Source: Vitrella brassicaformis CCMP3155
Taxonomy: Eukaryota > Protista > Chromerida
Assembly: GCA_001179505.1 (NCBI GenBank)
Contig: CDMY01000347.1
Span: 62,001 to 126,000 of the forward strand
Direction: 5' to 3'
DNA length: 64,000 bases
The notes under the pieces are model-generated. The model was not told where the DNA came from. It saw only the letters and a program-made list of their open reading frames with translations, and ran no database searches. Of this stretch, positions 22,555 through 31,383 are shown piece by piece. Each line of letters begins with the position of its first letter. Positions within the stretch are counted from its first letter, which is position 1. The position numbers and the translations under genes are program-made.

Positions 22555-23971
22555 TCACTGCACCTCCGCTCCCTCCACCCTGTCTACGCCTCCTGCTGAT
22601 GCTGCTGCTGCTGCTGGTGGCTGTGGCTGGAGGAATGGGTGTTGCAGCACCTGCGATGCGCTCGGACGCTTCTCGGGGTCGTACTCCCACAAACTAAAGA
22701 CACAGGAGGCAGGCAGGCAGGCAGGCAGGCAATGCAGACATGGCAGCGTGTGCGTGCATGAGTACCTACCTCCATATGAGGTCGGCCATGTCGGTGTGTA
22801 TGTCGGGGAACCGCTCCTTGAATGCCTCCACCGACGGCACCTCACACGCCTCGTCCTTGTTCCCATACTGCACACACCCATCCATCCATCCATCCATGCA
22901 CCATCTCACTTGCACCATAACGTGTCTCACCCACCTCGAGCATCGACCCCTTGAAGCTGACCATCCTATCGAGGGCGCGGAAGGTCCCCACACCCCTCAC
23001 GCCATGCATCCGCTGCAGGTCGGCGAGCTCCTGCATGTCCGGCAGGAAGGGCGAGGGCTGCCCAGTGGCCATGCAGAACAGCACACACCCCGCCGAGAAC
23101 ATGTCGGCCTTGCTCGACGGCTGCTGCTGCTGGCCCTGCCAACAGACGGGACCGATCAGCACCTCGGGCGCATGCTGGCCGAGCGTCCCTGACATACATG
23201 AGAAAAACGAGACAGTGGCATGGTGGTGTGTGTTGTGTTGTGTTGTGGTGTGGTGTACCCATGTAGTCGCGCCATGGGATGGCGTGCTTATCCTTGGCGG
23301 CCCACGCGAAGTCACACAGCAGCACACCCGCTATCCTCCCCCTGCTACCCCCCTCTCCCTCCCCCTCCCCCCTCTCCAAATTGAGCAGGACATTGGCCGC
23401 ATTCACGTCGCGATGCGTGACTCCTTTGCCGTGGACGTGCTGCAGTGCCGACATCAGCCCGCGGGTCACCACGCGCTGCTCGTCGACCTGCAGGGGGCCG
23501 TGGCTGTTGACGTGTTGTTCGAGGTCGGTGTGTGCGAGGGGCATGACGAGGTGGATGAAGCCGTCCTTCTTGTAGGCGTTGAGGCACTGGATGATGTTGG
23601 GGTGCGGCACCGGGTTGCTATTCGTGCCAGCACCACGGGGGAGATGCTGCACGTACTGCAACAACAGAAACCGCCAGAGGGAACAACCATCCATCCATCC
23701 ATCCGGCCATCCGGCCATCCGGCCATCCGGCCATCCGTCCATCAATCCCGTGTACCTGGTGAGCTGCCACCTCCTGGTGAGCCTTGGCGATGTCATCCTC
23801 CCCCTTCGCCGCTATCTTCTTCACCACGAGTGTGAACACCGGCACCGGCGCACGCGAGTCGTCACCGCCGGCAGCAGACGAGGATGTGTCGGCATACTTG
23901 GCACGATAGAGGGTGCCGTGGCGGCCTTCAAAGAAGGCGTGCTCCTCGAAAATGTACTCGGGGGGTGGCAT
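22555..23971 (-). CDS. Atypical Ser/Thr protein kinase (CMGC/CDK-like features)
   Basis: Five exons: EGRHGTLY (Gly loop), LVVKK, HQEV, HPNIIQCL, HRDVNAAN, CDFA, GTLGQHAPE, ADMFSAGC, LWEYDPEKRPSASQVLQHPF; stop at 22555. Confidence 0.85.
23693..23737. repeat. Intronic (CCAT)n array converting to (ATCCGGCC)4
   Basis: Seen directly in the first kinase intron. Confidence 0.8.
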
Positions 23972-24452
23972 CGCTTGATGCGCTTTGCAATGACGGCTAT
24001 CTGTTTTACACCATGGGAGGGCAACCTACCACAGCGGCATGACAAAAGACTGTTTGGCTGTCATGTCCACCGCAATTTCACTCTGCGAGCTCGGATCGGC
24101 AAGGCTGCGCGCTTAGCTGTCGCGGAGCGCTGCTGGGCTTGGCGAGGGCCTTGTGGCTGCGTGCATTCAGGCGCTGCTGCAGATCTTGACCCTCGCGAGG
24201 CAGATCTCGGTCCGTCGGCCTTCGCCGCGTCAGCCCATCCCATCCCTCCCATCCCGGTGACCCTTCCTCCGAAGGCTCGAGCGCAGCCTTCCTCTCATCT
24301 GGCGCCGCTCGTGTGACCGGCGCCCTTTCACCGTGCTGCCGAGTTTTCAACCCGCCGCCGTCCCTGCCCCACTCAGGGACGGCGCCCTTGTTTTCTTCCC
24401 CTTCAAGCCTCCCTAACACACGCCCACAGCGGGGGGAGGGAAGCAGGCAGGG
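23972..24452. promoter_or_regulatory. Putative bidirectional promoter with TGCGAGCT at 24084-24091
   Basis: Between the divergent kinase and AdoMetDC-ODC ATGs; contains the recurrent motif. Confidence 0.5.
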
Positions 24453-27400
24453 ATGGCACCCGACATGCGAGAGGGGATGGGTGGTGTGGGTGTCGGTGTG
24501 GGTGACGTATGCGGGTTTGGGTTCGAGGGCGTGGAGAAGCGGTATGTGCTCCGGCTGAATGAGGGCGTGTTCGCTCATCTGGATGTGGGCAGCCTGCGAG
24601 AGGTGGAGGATCACCAGTGGCAGGGGGTGCTCGACAAGGCCGGTGAGTGCTCAGACTCAGACTCAGACAGCCCGCTTCTGGTGCCCTGCCCATGTGCAAA
24701 TGCGTGTTGTTCTGTCGTTTCCTTCTTCTTTTCTCCGTGTGTGTCGCGTGGCGTGTCTGCCTGCCTGCCTGCCTGCAGTGTGTCACATATTGTCCAAGAT
24801 CAAGTCGGTGCCTGCCGTCGGCCCCCCCGACAAACAGGCGGTGGACGCCCTCGCCAAAGTGACCAGCAAGAAGAAACGAAAAACCAAGAGAAGAAAGACC
24901 AAAGTCAGTATGAGAGAGATGACAGACACAAACATCCACTCGTTCGCTCACCCAATGCGTTGCATCCCGTGTGCATCTCTGCACTCGCAGGGGAAGCGTG
25001 CGAGTGCTGTGGTGGTGCGGTCGGACGAAAGCAATGGGTCGCCCCTGAGAGGGTGTGTCGGTGCCGCTGGTGTTGGTGGCGGCGATGGGAGCGTCACTGC
25101 GTATCTGCTGTCGGAGAGCTCCCTCTTCGTCTATGACGACACCATCGTCCTCAAGACCTGCGGGTATGTTGGTACCAACACACTGCTCTCATCCAGTCCA
25201 GCACTCACTCGCCCGCCCCGACATGCACTGCACTCGTGTGTGTCTGTCTGTCTGTCTGTCTGTGTGTCTGCAGGACTACGACTCCCCTGTTGTGCACGGA
25301 CGCGTTGCTCCACCTGCTTCTCCCCGACCACATCCTCTCTCGCATCGCCAGCCACCACTTGGGGGACAGCTGCAGGTCGTCGGAGTGTGAGTGGCCCTCG
25401 ATCGCTCTGTCGAGTGTGGTGGACTACGCCCTGTTCACGCACCTCAACTATCGCCAGCCACAGCTGCAGACCTACCCACACAGGACATTCAATGAAGAGG
25501 TCCGTCCGTGAGCATGAGCCGCGGCTGGAGGAGGGAGAGGGGGTGTGGTGGGACGGTTGTGTGTGTGTGTGTGTGTATGTGTGTCAGGTGAGTTTCCTGA
25601 AGAGGTATTTCCCCAGTGGCGAGGCCTTCGAGCTGCAGACGGCCCCCGATTCCACCTTCTCAATATTCCTCTACCAAAGCCCCATCAGCAGCAACCAGCA
25701 GCGCCAGGACCAGCCCCCGGCAATCGCCCACCCCTCCCTCCCATCCCCCCACACCACCACGGCGATCCTCTCTTCACCCAACGGCCGCAGGCACCACTCC
25801 CAGCCGCACCAGCAGACGCAGAAGCGGCGCAACATGCCCCCCCTGTCGGCAGTGCAGGCAGGATCTGCGCCTGACGGGAGCCATCGACCTAGGGGAGGGC
25901 AGCGGGAGCAGGTGGTCACTCTGACCGAGTGGCTGCTCATCGGCATCGACCCCAAATCGGTGGAGAGGTTCGCCGGCAGGGGCGAGTATGAGCACGGTGA
26001 TGGTGGGGAGGGCGGGGAGGGCGGTGGGAGGGGGCTGCATTTTTGCGGCGCGCTGCGGGACCTCCTGCCCTCTGGTGCAGAGGTCGACCAGTACTGGTTC
26101 GCGCCTCAGGGTTACTCCTGCAACGCCCTTGCCGGCCCCTTCTTCCTGAATGCCCACATCTCGCCCGAGCCGGAGACGTCCTACGCGTCGGTGGAGGTCA
26201 ACTTCCCTTTTGGCATCGATCATGGCATGTCGTGCGAGGCCATCCAGAGGGTGGTGGTGGAGTGCTTCAGGCCGAGGGAGGTGCACCTGGTGCACATACG
26301 CCCTACTGAGGTGAGTGTGTGTGTGGGTGAGGTGACATGAACACGGCACCGGCACACGCATCGGCCAGTGTGTGGTTTGTTTGTGTCAGGATGGGTTTGT
26401 GGTGCCTGCTCCCTCTCCCCTGCACCAACCGTGTGGCGGCGACTCGTCATCTCACCACGTGTCGGCAGTGCCCTATTCCAAGGTGCGTCAGGTGGAGGCT
26501 TCGGGCAGCAGCTACCGCGTCGTGCACAGCCACTACTCCCTGCAAGAGTGAGTGACCAGCATCCGCAGTGCGTTCCCCTCCCCTCCTTGATGTAACTCTC
26601 TGTCTGTCTGTCTGTCTGTCTGTCTGTGTGCTCATGGGTGTGCAGGCGGCATTCAGTGAAGCAGGCAGGCGGCCCACTGCCGCCCCTGTCTTCGCTGCTG
26701 CCCCCTTCACCTCTCCAGCTCCCCTCCCCAATGCGGTCCCCGCCCCTCCCCTCCCTCACAGACAGCAACAACTCAGACAACGACTCGTCCGGACGGTCGT
26801 CGTCATGCACCAACACCTCCGCCACGCCATCGTTCATCCTCAATGTCGACGGACTGGACGAGAGCATCAGCAGCGATGGCGACGGTTCGGTGTCTGGAGG
26901 TGGTGGTGGGTCTGAAGCGCTGGAGGATCTGCTTGAGCGGCTGAAGGTCGAGGTGGGCATGGCGTGTGTGGATGGTGCCGGTGGTGGCGGTGGCGGTGAT
27001 GGTGAGGTGGGGGTGGTGCGTGAGCTGGTGGATCAGAAAAGGGTCGACGGGCCGTTTGTTGTCGTGGACATCCAGAGGGTGAGTGAGATAACTCACGACA
27101 CATACAGAGGGAGAATAGACGGGCAATGAGGTCTGCGCTGTATTGGCGTACAGGTGATCGATCAGTATCGTCAGTGGCAGCGGCTGCTCCCCAAGATCAC
27201 ACCTTACTACGCCGTAAGCAACCGCCCCACACACACGAGAGACCACACACAGACGAATCCATCCAGGGTGGTCTCTGCAATGATCTGATCCATCAGGTCA
27301 AGTGCAATCCTGACCCCGTGTTGGTGCGGGTGCTGGCCGCCCTCGGCGCACGATTCGACTGCGCCTCACAAAACGAAATCCGACAGGTACAAAGCCCCTG

Positions 27401-28741
27401 TCTGTTGCCGTCCGTTTGTGTGTTCGCATCCATTCCATGACTTGTCTGCGTGTGGATGCAACGGATGCAACGGCTGCAGGTGCTGGACCTGGGTGCGCAG
27501 GGCAGCGACATAGTGTACGCCAACCCCTGCAAACAGGTCTCCGGCCTGGCTTATGCGCGCCAGCACAACGTGCAGCTCATGACTTTCGACAACCAGGACG
27601 AGCTGCACAAAATCGCCGTAAGTTAGCAGACACGGAGACACAAAAGCCGGAGACTCCAGCATTTCAGACGAAGAATGGATGTGTCTTCCTTCCGCCCTGC
27701 CCCTCTGCTGCTGCAGGCCCACCACCCGTCATCCAGCCTCCTGCTGCGCATCCAGACCGACGACACCCACGCCGTCTGCCCAATGTCGTGCAAATTCGGC
27801 GCCCCGGAGCAATCGTGGCGGGTCCTGCTGCAGTGCGCCAAAGCCCTCAACCTCTCGGTCGTGGGCGTGTGCTTTCACGTGGGATCGGGCTGCAAGCAGA
27901 AGGGGGCCTTCTCGCGGGCGCTGCGCGATGCGAGGCGGCTGTTCGATTTGGGCGTGGGGGCGGGCTTCGACATGCGGGTGCTCGACATTGGCGGCGGGTT
28001 CCCGTGTGAGGTGGAGGATGGCGGGGTGTGTGAGGGGGTGGTCACCTTCCCTGAGATGGCGAGAGAGATCACCGACACGCTTGACGAGCTGTTCGACAAA
28101 GATGTAAGGACGGGGAGGATCCACACACCGACGCACGTGTGGGGGGGGAAGGTATGTGTGTCTCCATACGTGTCCATCAGGTGCAAGTGATAGCCGAGCC
28201 AGGGCGGTACTTTGCCGGTGCCTGCCACACACTCGCCGTGCGGGTGTTTGCGAGGAGGGCGCCGACTGAGACCACCGCAGATGAGGGGCGGTACCTCTAC
28301 TACGTCAACGACGGCCTCTACGGCTCCTTCAACTGCCTCCTGTACGACCACGCAACCGTCACACCAGAGCTGCTCAGGTACAGCCATGGGCACACACACA
28401 CAGACGCGACATGGAGCCATCCATCTGTGTGTGCGGAATCTGTGTGTGTCAGGGAGCATGATGGGGGCCCCGTGTATCGGTCCACCGTCTTCGGGCCGAC
28501 GTGTGACGGCTTCGATGTCATTCTCAAAGACGTCATGCTGCCCATCATCGAGGTGAGTGAGGCACAGGCAGACAGAGCGCCGGCGGAGAGCGGGATGAGG
28601 TGCTTTGGATGTTTTGTGTGAGTGCAGATGGACGAGTGGCTGGTGTTCCGCAACATGGGTGCCTACACGACGGCGGCGTGCTCCACATTCAACGGATTCA
28701 GCAAACCCAAACCGTTCTACTGCAGAGTGGCGCGAGAGTGA
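24453..28741 (+). CDS. Bifunctional S-adenosylmethionine decarboxylase / ornithine decarboxylase (AdoMetDC-ODC fusion)
   Basis: AdoMetDC motifs: FEGVEKR, YLLSE|SSLF (autocleavage 25114-25119), KTCGTT, YPHRTFNEEV, FAPQGYSCN, HISPEPETSYASVE. ODC motifs: YYA-VKCN (PLP Lys), FDCAS, YANPCK, TFDN, KFGA, FHVGSG, LDIGGGF, AEPGRYF, NDGLYGSFN, GPTCDG, NMGAYT. Hinge exons splice in frame (26310/26390 phase 0, about 26547/26646 phase 2, 27078/27154 phase 0) with no stop. Confidence 0.9.
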
Positions 28742-30535
28742 TTTCGGGGTGCATGTCTGTCTTGCGTGTATGTGTCTTGCGTGTGTGTATGTGTGCGTGC
28801 GTGTGTGATTGTACCTGTGCTCATGACCATGACCATGGCATATGCCCTGCCACTGAGTGGGGGCCCACATTTTCCTAGCTACCTTCCTGACGGCACTTTC
28901 GCTGCTGTTCGTGTGTGTGTGTTGTTTGTCGTGAAGAAGAGTCGCCGACGGCGATCAACCAACATGACGGGAGGGGGGCGTATCGCAACGTATGGCATCG
29001 CAGCGTATCGTATCGATCTTCCTTCTCCGTGTTGTGCGGCACATCCGTGAAGTGTCGTGCCCCTTGTCTACGTCTCCTCGGGAATGTGTCTCGACATGCA
29101 CTCACTGGTGTCTTGTCGGGAAACATCCCCAAGGGCGAGAGGGAAGGGGGCACGACACACACGCTGGCTGGCCGTGATGGAAGCATGCAGGGCAGGATGC
29201 ATGCGTATGCAGCAAAGATGCATGCCATGCTGGATGATTCGTTCATTCTTGACCTAGCGGCGACGTGTGGACGAAATGTGAGCTCCCTCCTTCAACAGTC
29301 ACCTCTCAACACATTGGGTCTGACCTGCGACAATGGTGAGATCTCGTGCGTTTAGGGCGAGCTGGAGTGGCAGGGCACTGACTGACATGCGTCACACAGC
29401 CAAAAGACTGACTCTGCTTGCCTTGATCGACTCTCGCGTTTCCTGTGGCGAGGTAGGTGTGAAGAACTCCTCCGTGACGTTTGTCTCCTGTTTTTTCGTG
29501 CGAATTAGGGGACACTCGTGACGGCTGGCGGGCTCATCCCTGCCTGGCCTCGGAAACGAAACAGCAGATTCCTTGCCCTGACTGACTTACTCAGCTAGGT
29601 TCCTCTCTGTCTGCTTGCTCAATCAAGAAATGCGTTGACGTTTGTTTCTCGTCCTGCCTGCCTTGGATGGATGAGGCCTGCGTGTCATGTTTGTACAGCG
29701 TGTATGTGTGTGTGGTGCATTGCTATGCTATCAACTGTATGCCTGTCTGTCTGTCTGTCTGTACAGAGCGATTACTGCATTCTTTCGTCCGTGTGTCATG
29801 TTCCTCAAAGGCGCCGTCAGCCAGCCAGCCAGCCAGTCAGTCCGTCATGCCCGTCCCGCCCATCCTGTTTGCCTGCGTGTAGGTGCCGAGCAGCGAGGAT
29901 TGCCGCTCGCTGACCACTCGGCACGTACGTATCGCAAACAAGGAAGGCGTGGCACACGTCACATGCAGCCCATGCCGATGGAGGGGTCGGTCGATTTTTC
30001 AAGGAAGGAAAGTGACAATGAATAGAGGGGCCGTGTTGAAGGATGCGTAAGGACGTAGGTAAGCTGCCTGCCTAGCTCATGAGCACACGATTTTGGCGAT
30101 AGAGAGGCATCCATCCCCATCCCACGGGATGGGATGATGGCTGGCCTCCAGGCAGTTTTGTGTGTGCTCTTCCATCGCTTCGTACGACGTACACGAATGC
30201 ATCGTCCATCTCATCCGTCGCTGTGTCGTCCATGCTGTCTCTTCCGTGGTGGTTTTAAGCCTCTCTCTCTCTCTCTCTCTCTGTGAGTGTGCCTGTCCTG
30301 GCTGGCGTTTTCGATGGGGCGGCCGGCGATCCTTGAACAAGACACCGCCGCCTGGCTGGCCGACTGATTATGCATGGCATGCTGTGTGATGCGTGTGTGC
30401 GTGTGCGTGTGAGTGTGGTGCTAAATTAATTGACTCAGTCAGCGAGAGACTCTGCGTGACGGGCGTGGCGTGTTGAGGTGAATATGAACATGAAGGCACT
30501 TACTGGTGTCGTCCACAGAACCGAATCGCGGCTAT

Positions 30536-31383
30536 CTATCCTTCGCTATCTCCTCCCGCCCTCACTCGTCTGAAGACCTGCCTGATGTGCCCGTCCTTGC
30601 TGGGCCCCCGCACCGTCCACAGACACTCAAACTCATCATCACTCACAAACCTCATCTGCACACAGTACACGTCATCCACACACACATGCTCAGTGCACCT
30701 GACCTGCCCACCCTGCCCCTCATCCCCGCCATCGCCCCTCTCTATCGAATGAAAGTGCCGCAGACACCCGCACACCGCCCCCTCATCTCCCTTGCCAACG
30801 GCAGCCAGCAGCTTTGCGAGGTCGTAATCGGAGTCGACAAAGTACACGTCCGTCTTAATCTGTTTGCGGCAGTCGTAGACATACCGGCGATAAGCCGCGA
30901 ACGACCCGCCGCTGTCCTCCAGTGTCAGTGTGCCCTCTTCGGTGTAGAGCAGGATGGGCAGCGGAGTGTGAGCATTGTCACCATCACCGTGCCACCCATC
31001 GAGAAGGGATGTGATGGGTCTGAAGTGGACGGTGCCGTCCATGGTGCCCCTCCCGCCACCCAGTCGGTAGTCGATGGCCTTGGATGTCCGCCACTCGCCC
31101 TTCAGATAGTCGTACATGTTGGCTGCCGGTGACGTAGGACTCTCAACAGAGGCCCTTGGCTGCATCGTCGACCCCTGGACCACAGACGAGCACCTCACCT
31201 GCATGAATGCATTAGGACAGAAGGAAGGTGAATGAACAGAAAGCACCGATGGCATGAGTTGCAACGCACCTGCATGATCTTAGACGGCGATGGCATGAAC
31301 GCAGATGTGATGGATTGCGCATGGCACGTCCCGACAAGCCTGAGAGGCCGTAGATGAGTGGGCAGCGTCCTCAGCGGCTTCAC
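30536..31383 (-). CDS. DUF6314-like (MoaF/lipocalin-like beta-barrel) protein, possible mitochondrial presequence
   Basis: Two exons (31270-31383, 30536-31198): YLKGEWRTSKAIDY, LYTEEGTL, YRRYVY, VYF, HFH, HVCVDDVY, WTVRGPSKDGHIRQVFRR; Arg/Leu-rich, acid-free N-terminus. Confidence 0.7.

What the first reader, a model, noticed from the sequence alone, without database searches (positions are those of the whole stretch)
24453..28741. Plasmodium-type bifunctional AdoMetDC-ODC in an intron-rich, apparently free-living alveolate
Seen: AdoMetDC and ODC joined in one reading frame, in the same order as Plasmodium, via a hinge of roughly 200 aa rich in S/P/G/D. Key residues of both halves are intact (E|S cleavage site, YSCN Cys, H-x-S-P-E; PLP Lys, HVGS, GPTCD Cys). 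Known: this fusion is usually described as a Plasmodium hallmark and drug target, while most eukaryotes have separate genes. Inference: the fusion predates parasitism and was lost in other apicomplexans, or arose convergently.
Basis: partly seen in the sequence, partly recalled or inferred. Interest (0 to 1): 0.8.

Follow-up and report, generated by a model that had tools for sequence, protein, structure and literature searches.

The report
Fused AdoMetDC-ODC gene of Vitrella
This is a real 14-exon Vitrella brassicaformis gene, spliced into one mRNA, that joins the two rate-limiting polyamine enzymes in one protein, but the fusion is already in the public gene models and occurs widely (Chromera, other apicomplexans, dinoflagellates, green plants, glaucophytes), so it is an ordinary orthologue.

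Summary
Window 24453-28741 (+) holds a 14-exon gene of 3114 coding bases (1037 aa): AdoMetDC, then a disordered hinge, then ODC, in one frame.

- **Splicing:** all 13 GT..AG introns are removed in assembled transcript contigs. This includes the critical joint 26547>26646, which links the last AdoMetDC exon to the hinge. One 4917-nt contig is laid on exons of both halves.
- **Catalytic residues:** those of both halves are intact.
- **Identity:** the window is Vitrella brassicaformis CCMP3155. Its public 1029-aa protein model is identical from the third ATG on and already carries all three Pfam domains.
- **"Plasmodium hallmark" does not hold:** 162-169 of the 334 proteins fetched are fused, always in this order. 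Named sources are Chromera, Cardiosporidium, Selenidium, Ancora, four dinoflagellates, many green algae, bryophytes, a lycophyte, ferns and two glaucophytes.
- **Trees:** both domain trees put Vitrella in a supported clade with Chromera and the apicomplexans.
- **Gap:** no Plasmodium sequence could be fetched, so that link rests on the apicomplexan bracket.
- **Prior literature:** Woo et al. 2015 already reported polyamine synthesis shared by chromerids and Plasmodium and lost in other apicomplexans.

Verdict: real, correctly read, not new.

The parts
24453..28741 (+). Whole coding region of the fused AdoMetDC-ODC gene. The 14 exons are 24453-24642, 24779-24903, 24991-25163, 25274-25499, 25588-26310, 26390-26547, 26646-27078, 27154-27213, 27297-27386, 27480-27617, 27717-28103, 28181-28377, 28453-28552 and 28628-28741. 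That is 3114 nt, or 1037 aa from the first ATG.
   Evidence: Sequence reading. Exon-by-exon match to P0001 and GT..AG ends. Spliced contigs. 100% identity to the public Vitrella protein.
24453..26547 (+). AdoMetDC (pyruvoyl proenzyme) half, exons 1-6. It carries two low-complexity inserts, at P0001 residues about 65-132 and about 262-384. The self-cleavage site E|S lies at 25114-25119, the catalytic Cys at 25159-25161 and the His at 26155-26157.
   Evidence: PF01536 on exons 1-5. Alignment to human AdoMetDC proenzyme 1msv/1jl0. AlphaFold core pLDDT 85-95, inserts below 50, and the last two strands at residues 500-522 lie in exon 6.
26548..26645 (+). Intron 6 (98 nt, phase 2), the junction between the two halves. 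If it were retained, the frame would read GAG TGA and stop at 26549-26551.
   Evidence: The joint 26547>26646 is seen in runs X1 and X6. The TGA follows from a GTGAGT donor in a phase-2 intron, so it is not evidence of an old stop codon.
26646..26904 (+). Disordered hinge, the first part of exon 7 (P0001 residues about 525-610), rich in S, G, L, P and D.
   Evidence: No Pfam hit. pLDDT below 50 over residues 527-610. Composition.
26905..28741 (+). ODC half: a pre-barrel helix, then the PLP-binding barrel and the C-terminal sheet domain, from the second part of exon 7 to exon 14. PLP Lys at 27300-27302, His of FHVGSG at 27876-27878, Cys of GPTCD at 28502-28504, stop at 28739-28741.
   Evidence: PF02784 and PF00278. 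E = 1e-111 to human ODC over residues 659-1024. pLDDT mostly 85-99.

Best explanation
This is the Vitrella brassicaformis orthologue of the bifunctional S-adenosylmethionine decarboxylase / ornithine decarboxylase known from Plasmodium.

Shown:
- One 14-exon gene is transcribed and spliced into one mRNA with a single 1037-codon frame.
- The N-terminal half has the eukaryotic pyruvoyl-AdoMetDC fold and residues.
- The C-terminal half is a eukaryotic PLP-dependent ODC whose matched region is strongly similar to human ODC.
- The two halves are joined by a linker of about 85 aa that is predicted to be disordered.

Inferred from the established chemistry of the two families and from the Plasmodium enzyme:
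- The proenzyme cuts itself between Glu and Ser (E147|S148 in the 1037-aa numbering). The Ser becomes the pyruvoyl cofactor.
- This leaves a small beta chain of about 147 aa and a long alpha chain of about 890 aa that stays joined to the hinge and ODC.
- ODC works as a head-to-tail dimer, with Lys and Cys contributed by opposite subunits, so the complex should be a dimer of processed protomers.
- It would make putrescine and decarboxylated AdoMet, the two substrates of spermidine synthase, in fixed one-to-one enzyme amounts from one promoter.

Evolution: the fusion was inherited vertically from at least the common ancestor of chromerids and apicomplexans, and probably of dinoflagellates too. 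It is much more widespread than that.
For: - Domains and colinear profile positions.
- All 13 introns spliced out in transcript contigs. Joint 26547>26646 appears in X1 (50 letters on the shorter side) and X6 (160 letters), which belong to two studies.
- One 4917-nt X6 contig is listed on exons 1-5, 7, 11 and 12, with record coordinates that leave room for the unlisted exons. Run X4 lies unspliced, as DNA does.
- No intron-6-retaining contig: the depth in that bin equals the exonic share of the spliced contig.
- The public 1029-aa model is identical except for the start codon and carries PF01536, PF02784 and PF00278.
- Catalytic residues match human AdoMetDC and ODC. They are invariant or nearly so in 60 fused proteins.
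- AlphaFold gives two confident domains and a low-confidence hinge.
- The Chromera orthologue is one uninterrupted 1041-codon ORF on a 3543-nt run contig.
- Trees: AdoMetDC half, chromerids plus apicomplexans 99/97, and the set that adds the dinoflagellates and 13 unnamed fused proteins 100/98. ODC half, 95/94 and 100/99.
Against: - No enzyme activity, self-processing or quaternary structure was measured.
- The runs are held as assembled contigs, and a contig can in principle bridge two transcripts. Only the splice joint itself directly links exon 6 to exon 7.
- Transcript ends, and a possible internal start for an ODC-only mRNA, cannot be seen in contigs.
- Runs X1 and X6 are not on record as RNA. 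Their RNA nature is inferred from the spliced contigs.
- Plasmodium itself is missing from both trees.
- The apicomplexan AdoMetDC branches are long (1.6-2.4 changes per column), so their placement carries some long-branch risk. Another long row, P0007, did not join them.
Confidence: 0.9

Rival explanations
1. Two adjacent genes are wrongly read as one. AdoMetDC would end at the TGA at 26549-26551, with intron 6 not removed. ODC would start at the ATG inside exon 7 (the M of MRSPP, near 26731) and have its own transcript.
For: An in-frame TGA follows exon 6 directly, and exon 6 ends exactly where the AdoMetDC fold ends. An in-frame ATG lies in the hinge. Contigs cannot show transcript starts.
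Against: The GT..AG joint 26547>26646 is present in two runs from two studies, and no contig keeps the intron. The TGA is what any phase-2 GTGAGT donor gives. Fused orthologues exist in Chromera as one uninterrupted ORF and in more than 160 other proteins.
Confidence: 0.04
2. The fusion is convergent. Vitrella, or chromerids, joined the two genes independently of Plasmodium.
For: Plasmodium itself was not in the trees. Gene fusions of polyamine enzymes have arisen more than once in bacteria (my recollection of Green et al. 2011, which is not held).
Against: The domain order is the same in all 162 fused proteins whose order could be checked. Both halves form one supported clade with three named apicomplexan fusions, including Cardiosporidium, which I recall from the literature as a close relative of the blood parasites (not checked here). 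The two domain trees are congruent.
Confidence: 0.04
3. The protein is fused but one half is an inactive regulatory pseudoenzyme, as with the trypanosome AdoMetDC prozyme or antizyme inhibitor.
For: Two long low-complexity inserts interrupt the AdoMetDC half. That half matches human AdoMetDC only in four separate stretches.
Against: Every residue checked for self-processing and catalysis is present and conserved across 60 fused proteins. The ODC half scores far better against ODC (E = 1e-111) than against antizyme inhibitor (E = 8e-83).
Confidence: 0.03

Closest known systems
Plasmodium falciparum bifunctional AdoMetDC/ODC (Muller et al. 2000, J Biol Chem 275:8097, as cited in PMC10216422)
   Same: AdoMetDC is N-terminal and ODC C-terminal in one polypeptide, joined by a non-conserved hinge. 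Low-complexity inserts lie inside the catalytic domains. It is the only source of the two substrates of spermidine synthase. Both organisms belong to the apicomplexan plus chromerid lineage.
   Different: Vitrella's protein is 1037 aa, against about 1400 aa in P. falciparum (my recollection). Its hinge and inserts are shorter and GC-type (S/G/P-rich). The gene has 13 introns. The organism is free-living and photosynthetic.
Fused AdoMetDC-ODC proteins of Chromera velia (P0004), Cardiosporidium cionae (P0005), Selenidium serpulae (P0003) and Ancora sagittata (P0312)
   Same: Same three Pfam domains in the same order. They are the nearest relatives of both halves in the trees. The AdoMetDC half is 45% identical to that of Chromera.
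   Different: Hinge and insert sequences are not alignable. Lengths range from 836 to 1070 aa.
Fused AdoMetDC-ODC proteins of dinoflagellates, Viridiplantae and glaucophytes
   Same: Same architecture and invariant catalytic residues. Named examples:
- Dinoflagellates: Gymnodinium, Togula, Biecheleria.
- Viridiplantae: Klebsormidium, Chlorokybus, Marchantia, Selaginella, Ceratopteris, Pyramimonas, Dolichomastix and others.
- Glaucophytes: Cyanophora, Gloeochaete.
   Different: They form separate, well-supported clades in both trees. Most are shorter (740-990 aa). Some green-lineage gene models also carry the plant AdoMetDC leader-peptide domain PF08132.
Stand-alone human AdoMetDC (PDB 1msv, 1jl0) and human ODC (PDB 1d7k, 2on3, 4zgy)
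   Same: Same folds and catalytic residues. The ODC half matches human ODC residues 38-408 with E = 1e-111.
   Different: These are separate genes in animals. The human ODC chains are longer at the C-terminus, whereas Vitrella's protein ends a few residues after the core. Vitrella's AdoMetDC has two large inserts and Gln in place of human Cys226.

Membership tests
Eukaryotic pyruvoyl-dependent AdoMetDC (Pfam PF01536) | Profile match above the curated cut-off, colinear over the domain | tested here: met
   Exon 5 scores 59.9 bits and exons 2-3 score 33.8 bits, against a cut-off of 22.2. Exons 1 and 4 match below the cut-off but at the expected profile positions. PF01536 is precomputed on P0001.
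Eukaryotic pyruvoyl-dependent AdoMetDC (Pfam PF01536) | Self-cleavage motif LSE|SS and the residues for processing and catalysis (human E8, E11, C82, S229, H243, E247) | tested here: met
   Alignment to 1msv and 1jl0 shows FEGVEK, YLLSESS, KTCG, GYS and HISPEPE. These residues are invariant or at least 90% conserved in 60 fused proteins.
Eukaryotic pyruvoyl-dependent AdoMetDC (Pfam PF01536) | Autocatalytic processing and decarboxylase activity | not testable with these tools
   Needs recombinant protein.
Eukaryotic ODC (group IV PLP decarboxylase; PF02784 + PF00278) | Both domains matched above the cut-off, with ODC rather than DAP or arginine decarboxylase as the best solved relatives | tested here: met
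   PF02784 scores 108 bits on exon 11 and PF00278 scores 33 and 25 bits. Human, mouse and trypanosome ODC give E = 1e-107 to 1e-111, against 1e-20 for DAP decarboxylase.
Eukaryotic ODC (group IV PLP decarboxylase; PF02784 + PF00278) | PLP Lys (human K69), H197, GGG loop, E274/R277, D332, C360/D361 and Y389 | tested here: met
   All are aligned and identical, and invariant (K690, H818, G856-858, E899-R902, C976, D977, Y1005).
Bifunctional AdoMetDC/ODC (Plasmodium type) | AdoMetDC N-terminal and ODC C-terminal in one reading frame and one mRNA | tested here: met
   Exon model. Splice joint 26547>26646 and a contig laid on exons of both halves.
Bifunctional AdoMetDC/ODC (Plasmodium type) | Common descent with the apicomplexan fusion in both halves | tested here: inconclusive
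   Met for Cardiosporidium, Selenidium and Ancora (99/97 and 95/94). Plasmodium itself could not be fetched: it is not among the 120 listed hits.
Bifunctional AdoMetDC/ODC (Plasmodium type) | Both activities present in one heterotetrameric complex | not testable with these tools
   Needs biochemistry.

The most novel reading that the evidence does not exclude
The AdoMetDC-then-ODC fusion is one very old invention shared by Archaeplastida (green lineage and glaucophytes) and Myzozoa (dinoflagellates, chromerids, apicomplexans). It would either be ancestral to a large part of eukaryotes or have moved once with an algal endosymbiont. The separate genes of seed plants, squirmids and other lineages would then be secondary fissions or replacements. 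In the clean ODC tree all fused domains lie on one side of a branch against unfused opisthokont and oomycete ODCs (91/83). This is neither shown nor rejected.
Probability: 0.3. Interest if true: 0.5.

Novelty: already known. Interest (0 to 1): 0.25.

Why it matters
It corrects a common textbook line. The fused AdoMetDC/ODC is not peculiar to malaria parasites. It is an inherited algal-type enzyme that Plasmodium kept while most other apicomplexans lost polyamine synthesis. Its value as a drug target is unchanged, because the human enzymes are separate.

Free-living, culturable Vitrella and Chromera could serve as safe sources of a shorter, less insert-laden homologue for structural work on the fused enzyme. 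No solved entry was named as a fused AdoMetDC/ODC among the Protein Data Bank matches here.

For the scan itself, this is a correctly read but ordinary gene.

Tried and rejected
- **Plasmodium sequence not obtained.** Two whole-length homologue searches, with Vitrella P0001 and with Cardiosporidium P0005, listed only their best 120 of 297 and 246 hits. The Protein Data Bank matches were stand-alone enzymes only.
- **Unfused AdoMetDC sequences not obtained.** The length window of the homologue search excluded them and the single exhaustive search went to the ODC exon. The AdoMetDC tree therefore holds fused proteins only and cannot test independent fusions on that side.
- **Literature.** Ten full-text searches found no paper that describes the fusion in chromerids or its wide spread. 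Green et al. 2011, which I recall as reporting the fusion in Micromonas, is not held.
- **First architecture call by BLAST was too insensitive.** Using the Vitrella AdoMetDC half as query, it missed Klebsormidium and Closterium. An HMM of 34 fused proteins corrected this.
- **Unnamed ODC-only hits from short metatranscriptome contigs were left out of the clean tree.** Many are probably fragments of fused proteins. For example, the cluster of P0128 holds an 820-aa member.
- **The TGA after exon 6 is not a fossil stop codon.** I considered that reading and rejected it, because any phase-2 GTGAGT donor gives this TGA.
- **Odd joints in run X4 are repeat artefacts.** Examples are 24776>26311 and 24776>26982. 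They have only 20-21 letters on the shorter side and arise at CTGC/GTCT repeats in introns.
- **Other notes.** Earlier notes of this scan near the locus concern other genes.
Full report
**What is in the sequence**

Reading 24300-29000 on the + strand gives a 14-exon gene. It runs from the ATG at 24453 to the TGA at 28739-28741.

- The exons sum to 3114 nt, or 1037 codons.
- All 13 introns are 75-136 nt long and begin with GT and end with AG.
- No ATG lies in 24100-24452, so 24453 is the first ATG in that part of the leader.
- Pfam, run exon by exon by reference, puts SAM_decarbox on exons 1-5 at colinear profile positions 3-293 of 343. It puts Orn_Arg_deC_N on exons 9-11 (positions 24-230 of 247) and Orn_DAP_Arg_deC on exons 12-13.
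- Exon 6 and exon 7 have no Pfam hit.

Whole-length work used P0001, a protein that a search returned.

**Whose gene it is**

The AdoMetDC part of the open frame 24559-26337 finds one protein at 100% identity. P0001 is 1029 aa, named "unnamed protein product [Vitrella brassicaformis CCMP3155]" by NCBI and "ornithine decarboxylase" by UniRef. PF01536, PF02784 and PF00278 are precomputed on it.

Each of my exon translations is an exact substring of P0001, in order, with one residue between them at the four split codons. The only difference is the start: the public model begins at the third ATG, 8 codons downstream. The fusion is therefore already in the public gene models.

**Is it one transcript?**

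If intron 6 (26548-26645) stayed in, the frame would read GAG TGA and end exactly where the AdoMetDC fold ends. An in-frame ATG lies in exon 7. "Two neighbouring genes" was therefore a real rival.

Laying the contigs of four public runs on 24300-28900 settles it as far as contigs can.

- Run X4 lies unspliced across introns (24300-25229 and 26795-28774 are continuous), as genomic DNA would.
- Runs X1, X2 and X6 show the GT..AG joints.
- Joint 26547>26646 is present in X1 (50 letters on the shorter side) and X6 (160 letters), which belong to two different studies.
- One X6 contig of 4917 nt starts upstream of 24300. Its listed pieces lie on exons 1-5, 7, 11 and 12, with no differing letters and with record coordinates that leave exactly the room for the unlisted exons.
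- Depth in the bin that holds intron 6 equals the exonic share of the spliced contig in both X1 and X6, so no intron-retaining contig is present.

Limits of this evidence:
- These are assemblies, not reads.
- The runs are not on record as RNA, and that is inferred from the splicing.
- Transcript ends cannot be seen.
- The TGA needs no special explanation, because any phase-2 intron with a GTGAGT donor gives it.

**Are both halves competent?**

Against human AdoMetDC proenzyme, Vitrella keeps these features (P0001 numbering):
- FEGVEK (human F7, E8, E11).
- YLLSE|SS, with the cleavage pair at E139|S140 (window 25114-25119).
- KTCG (human C82).
- F401 (human F223), S407 (human S229) and H420 (human H243).
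- E424 and E433 (human E247 and E256).

Human C226 is Gln here.

Against human ODC (E = 1e-111 over residues 659-1024), all of K69, D88, E94, R154, H197, the GGG loop, E274, R277, D332, C360, D361 and Y389 are identical.

In an alignment of 60 fused proteins these residues are invariant or at least 90% conserved.

An AlphaFold model built on that alignment (mean pLDDT 74.9) has two confident domains, with cores at 85-99.
- It has low confidence at residues 87-127 and 272-334, which are the two low-complexity inserts in AdoMetDC.
- It has low confidence at residues 527-610, the hinge.
- Residues 500-522, encoded by exon 6, form the last two strands of the AdoMetDC fold.
- The true linker is therefore about 85 aa, followed by a confident helix at 611-626.

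**How it most likely works**

This part is inferred from the chemistry of the two families and from the Plasmodium enzyme.

1. The proenzyme self-cleaves at E|S and makes its pyruvoyl group.
2. A beta chain of about 147 aa stays bound.
3. The alpha chain remains covalently tied through the hinge to ODC.
4. ODC dimerises head to tail, with shared active sites.
5. The cell thus makes the two substrates of spermidine synthase from one promoter, in one-to-one enzyme amounts.

None of this was measured here.

**How common the fusion is**

Whole-length searches with P0001 and with the Cardiosporidium protein list well over a hundred proteins carrying PF01536, PF02784 and PF00278.

By my own domain calls, 162 (BLAST) to 169 (HMM) of the 334 proteins fetched are fused. 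All 162 whose domain order was checked have AdoMetDC first.

Named sources:
- **Chromerids and apicomplexans:** Chromera velia, Cardiosporidium cionae, the gregarines Selenidium serpulae and Ancora sagittata.
- **Dinoflagellates:** Gymnodinium catenatum, G. smaydae, Togula jolla, Biecheleria cincta.
- **Green algae:** Pyramimonas, Dolichomastix, Nephroselmis, Cymbomonas, Bryopsis, Ostreobium, Neomeris, Nannochloris, Myrmecia, Trebouxia.
- **Streptophyte algae:** Chlorokybus, Klebsormidium, Mesotaenium, Netrium, Closterium, Coleochaete.
- **Land plants:** the liverworts Marchantia, Riccia and Calypogeia; the lycophyte Selaginella; and Ceratopteris and Psilotum.
- **Glaucophytes:** Cyanophora and Gloeochaete.

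The Chromera protein is one uninterrupted 1041-codon ORF on a 3543-nt run contig. The Cardiosporidium gene lies on a 114-kb genomic contig.

**Trees**

Support values are ultrafast bootstrap / SH-aLRT.

| Tree | Chromerid + apicomplexan clade | Set that adds the dinoflagellates and 13 unnamed fused proteins |
|---|---|---|
| AdoMetDC half, 54 fused proteins, careful search | Vitrella, Chromera, Cardiosporidium, Selenidium, Ancora and one unnamed EukProt transcript: 99/97 | 100/98, against green lineage plus glaucophytes |
| ODC half, 67 rows, careful search (bootstrap not fully settled) | Same taxa plus the squirmids Digyalum and Platyproteum: 95/94 | 100/99 |

Rows left out of the ODC tree: unnamed ODC-only rows, the 1018-aa Logan protein P0124, and the frog protein P0122, whose ODC match spans nearly its whole 1170 aa.

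The two halves tell the same story, so the pair has been inherited together in this lineage. Convergence within the apicomplexan plus chromerid group is not supported.

All fused ODC domains lie on one side of a branch against unfused opisthokont and Albugo ODCs, at 91/83. This neither shows nor rejects a single origin of all fusions.

Caveats:
- The apicomplexan AdoMetDC branches are long.
- There are no unfused AdoMetDCs in the tree.
- There is no Plasmodium sequence in either tree.

**Literature**

- Woo et al. 2015 (PMC4501334) already state that polyamine synthesis is shared between chromerids and Plasmodium and was lost in all other apicomplexan lineages.
- A 2023 review still lists the bifunctional enzyme among the "peculiarities" of Plasmodium (PMC10216422).
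- I recall, but could not open, Green et al. 2011 (Mol Microbiol 81:1109), which reports the same fusion in Micromonas.
- No searchable paper describes the chromerid fusion or its wide spread. That is a gap in prose, not in data.

**Surroundings**

- Upstream, on the - strand, a protein-kinase gene is transcribed divergently. Its ORF pieces lie at 22966-23971, with a Pkinase hit.
- Downstream, on the - strand, there is a DUF6314 gene at 30536-31264.
- Nothing in the neighbourhood relates to polyamines.

**Verdict**

The "predates parasitism" reading is supported. The "Plasmodium hallmark" premise is not, and the gene, its architecture and the pathway-level conclusion are already public.

Noticed in passing
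P0280 (Leptophrys vorax, EukProt) against P0283 and P0285 (Closterium): The fused protein attributed to the vampyrellid amoeba Leptophrys nests inside Closterium with 100% support and very short branches in both domain trees. It is most likely prey (zygnematophyte) RNA in the amoeba's transcriptome, not a rhizarian fusion.
   Followed up: partly
P0125 (Digyalum oweni, 436 aa) and P0127 (Platyproteum vivax, 533 aa): These squirmid transcripts encode ODC only, and Digyalum's is marked as a complete ORF. Yet they nest inside the fused chromerid plus apicomplexan ODC clade. This is either a secondary fission of the fusion or partial transcripts.
   Followed up: partly
P0267 (Cymbomonas), P0303 and P0310 (Trebouxia): These fused AdoMetDC-ODC proteins are named 'Mitochondrial 2-oxoadipate and 2-oxoglutarate transporter' in NCBI records, although they carry only PF01536, PF02784 and PF00278. 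This is probably a propagated mis-annotation.
   Followed up: no
P0073 and P0086 (Chlorokybus), P0285 (Closterium): These gene models also carry PF08132, the plant AdoMetDC leader peptide that is normally a separate upstream ORF. The green-lineage fusions therefore seem to derive from the uORF-regulated plant type of AdoMetDC, and the models may have merged the uORF. No ATG, and so no uORF, lies in 24100-24452 of the Vitrella leader.
   Followed up: partly
window 25230-25275, 25547-25589, 26589-26635 and 24750-24778: Introns of this gene hold short GTCT/CTGC and GT repeats. The read tool skipped them, and they produce false long-range joints in the DNA run X4, such as 24776>26311 with 20-21 letters on the shorter side.
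   Followed up: partly
window 24453 against 24477: The public protein model starts at the third in-frame ATG (24477). The first ATG of the known leader is at 24453, which adds 8 residues.
   Followed up: yes
window 22966-23971 (- strand) and 30536-31264 (- strand): The neighbours are a divergently transcribed protein-kinase gene upstream and a DUF6314 gene downstream. The 4917-nt X6 contig runs about 1.4 kb past 28900, so the gene has a long 3' UTR or the contig overlaps the downstream gene's transcript.
   Followed up: no
P0121 (Oppiella), P0123 (Medioppia), P0002 (Ephemera), P0122 (Gastrophryne): Several animal 'ODC' models of 670-1170 aa matched the single ODC exon in two or three separate stretches. 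They are likely tandem ODC copies merged by gene prediction.
   Followed up: no
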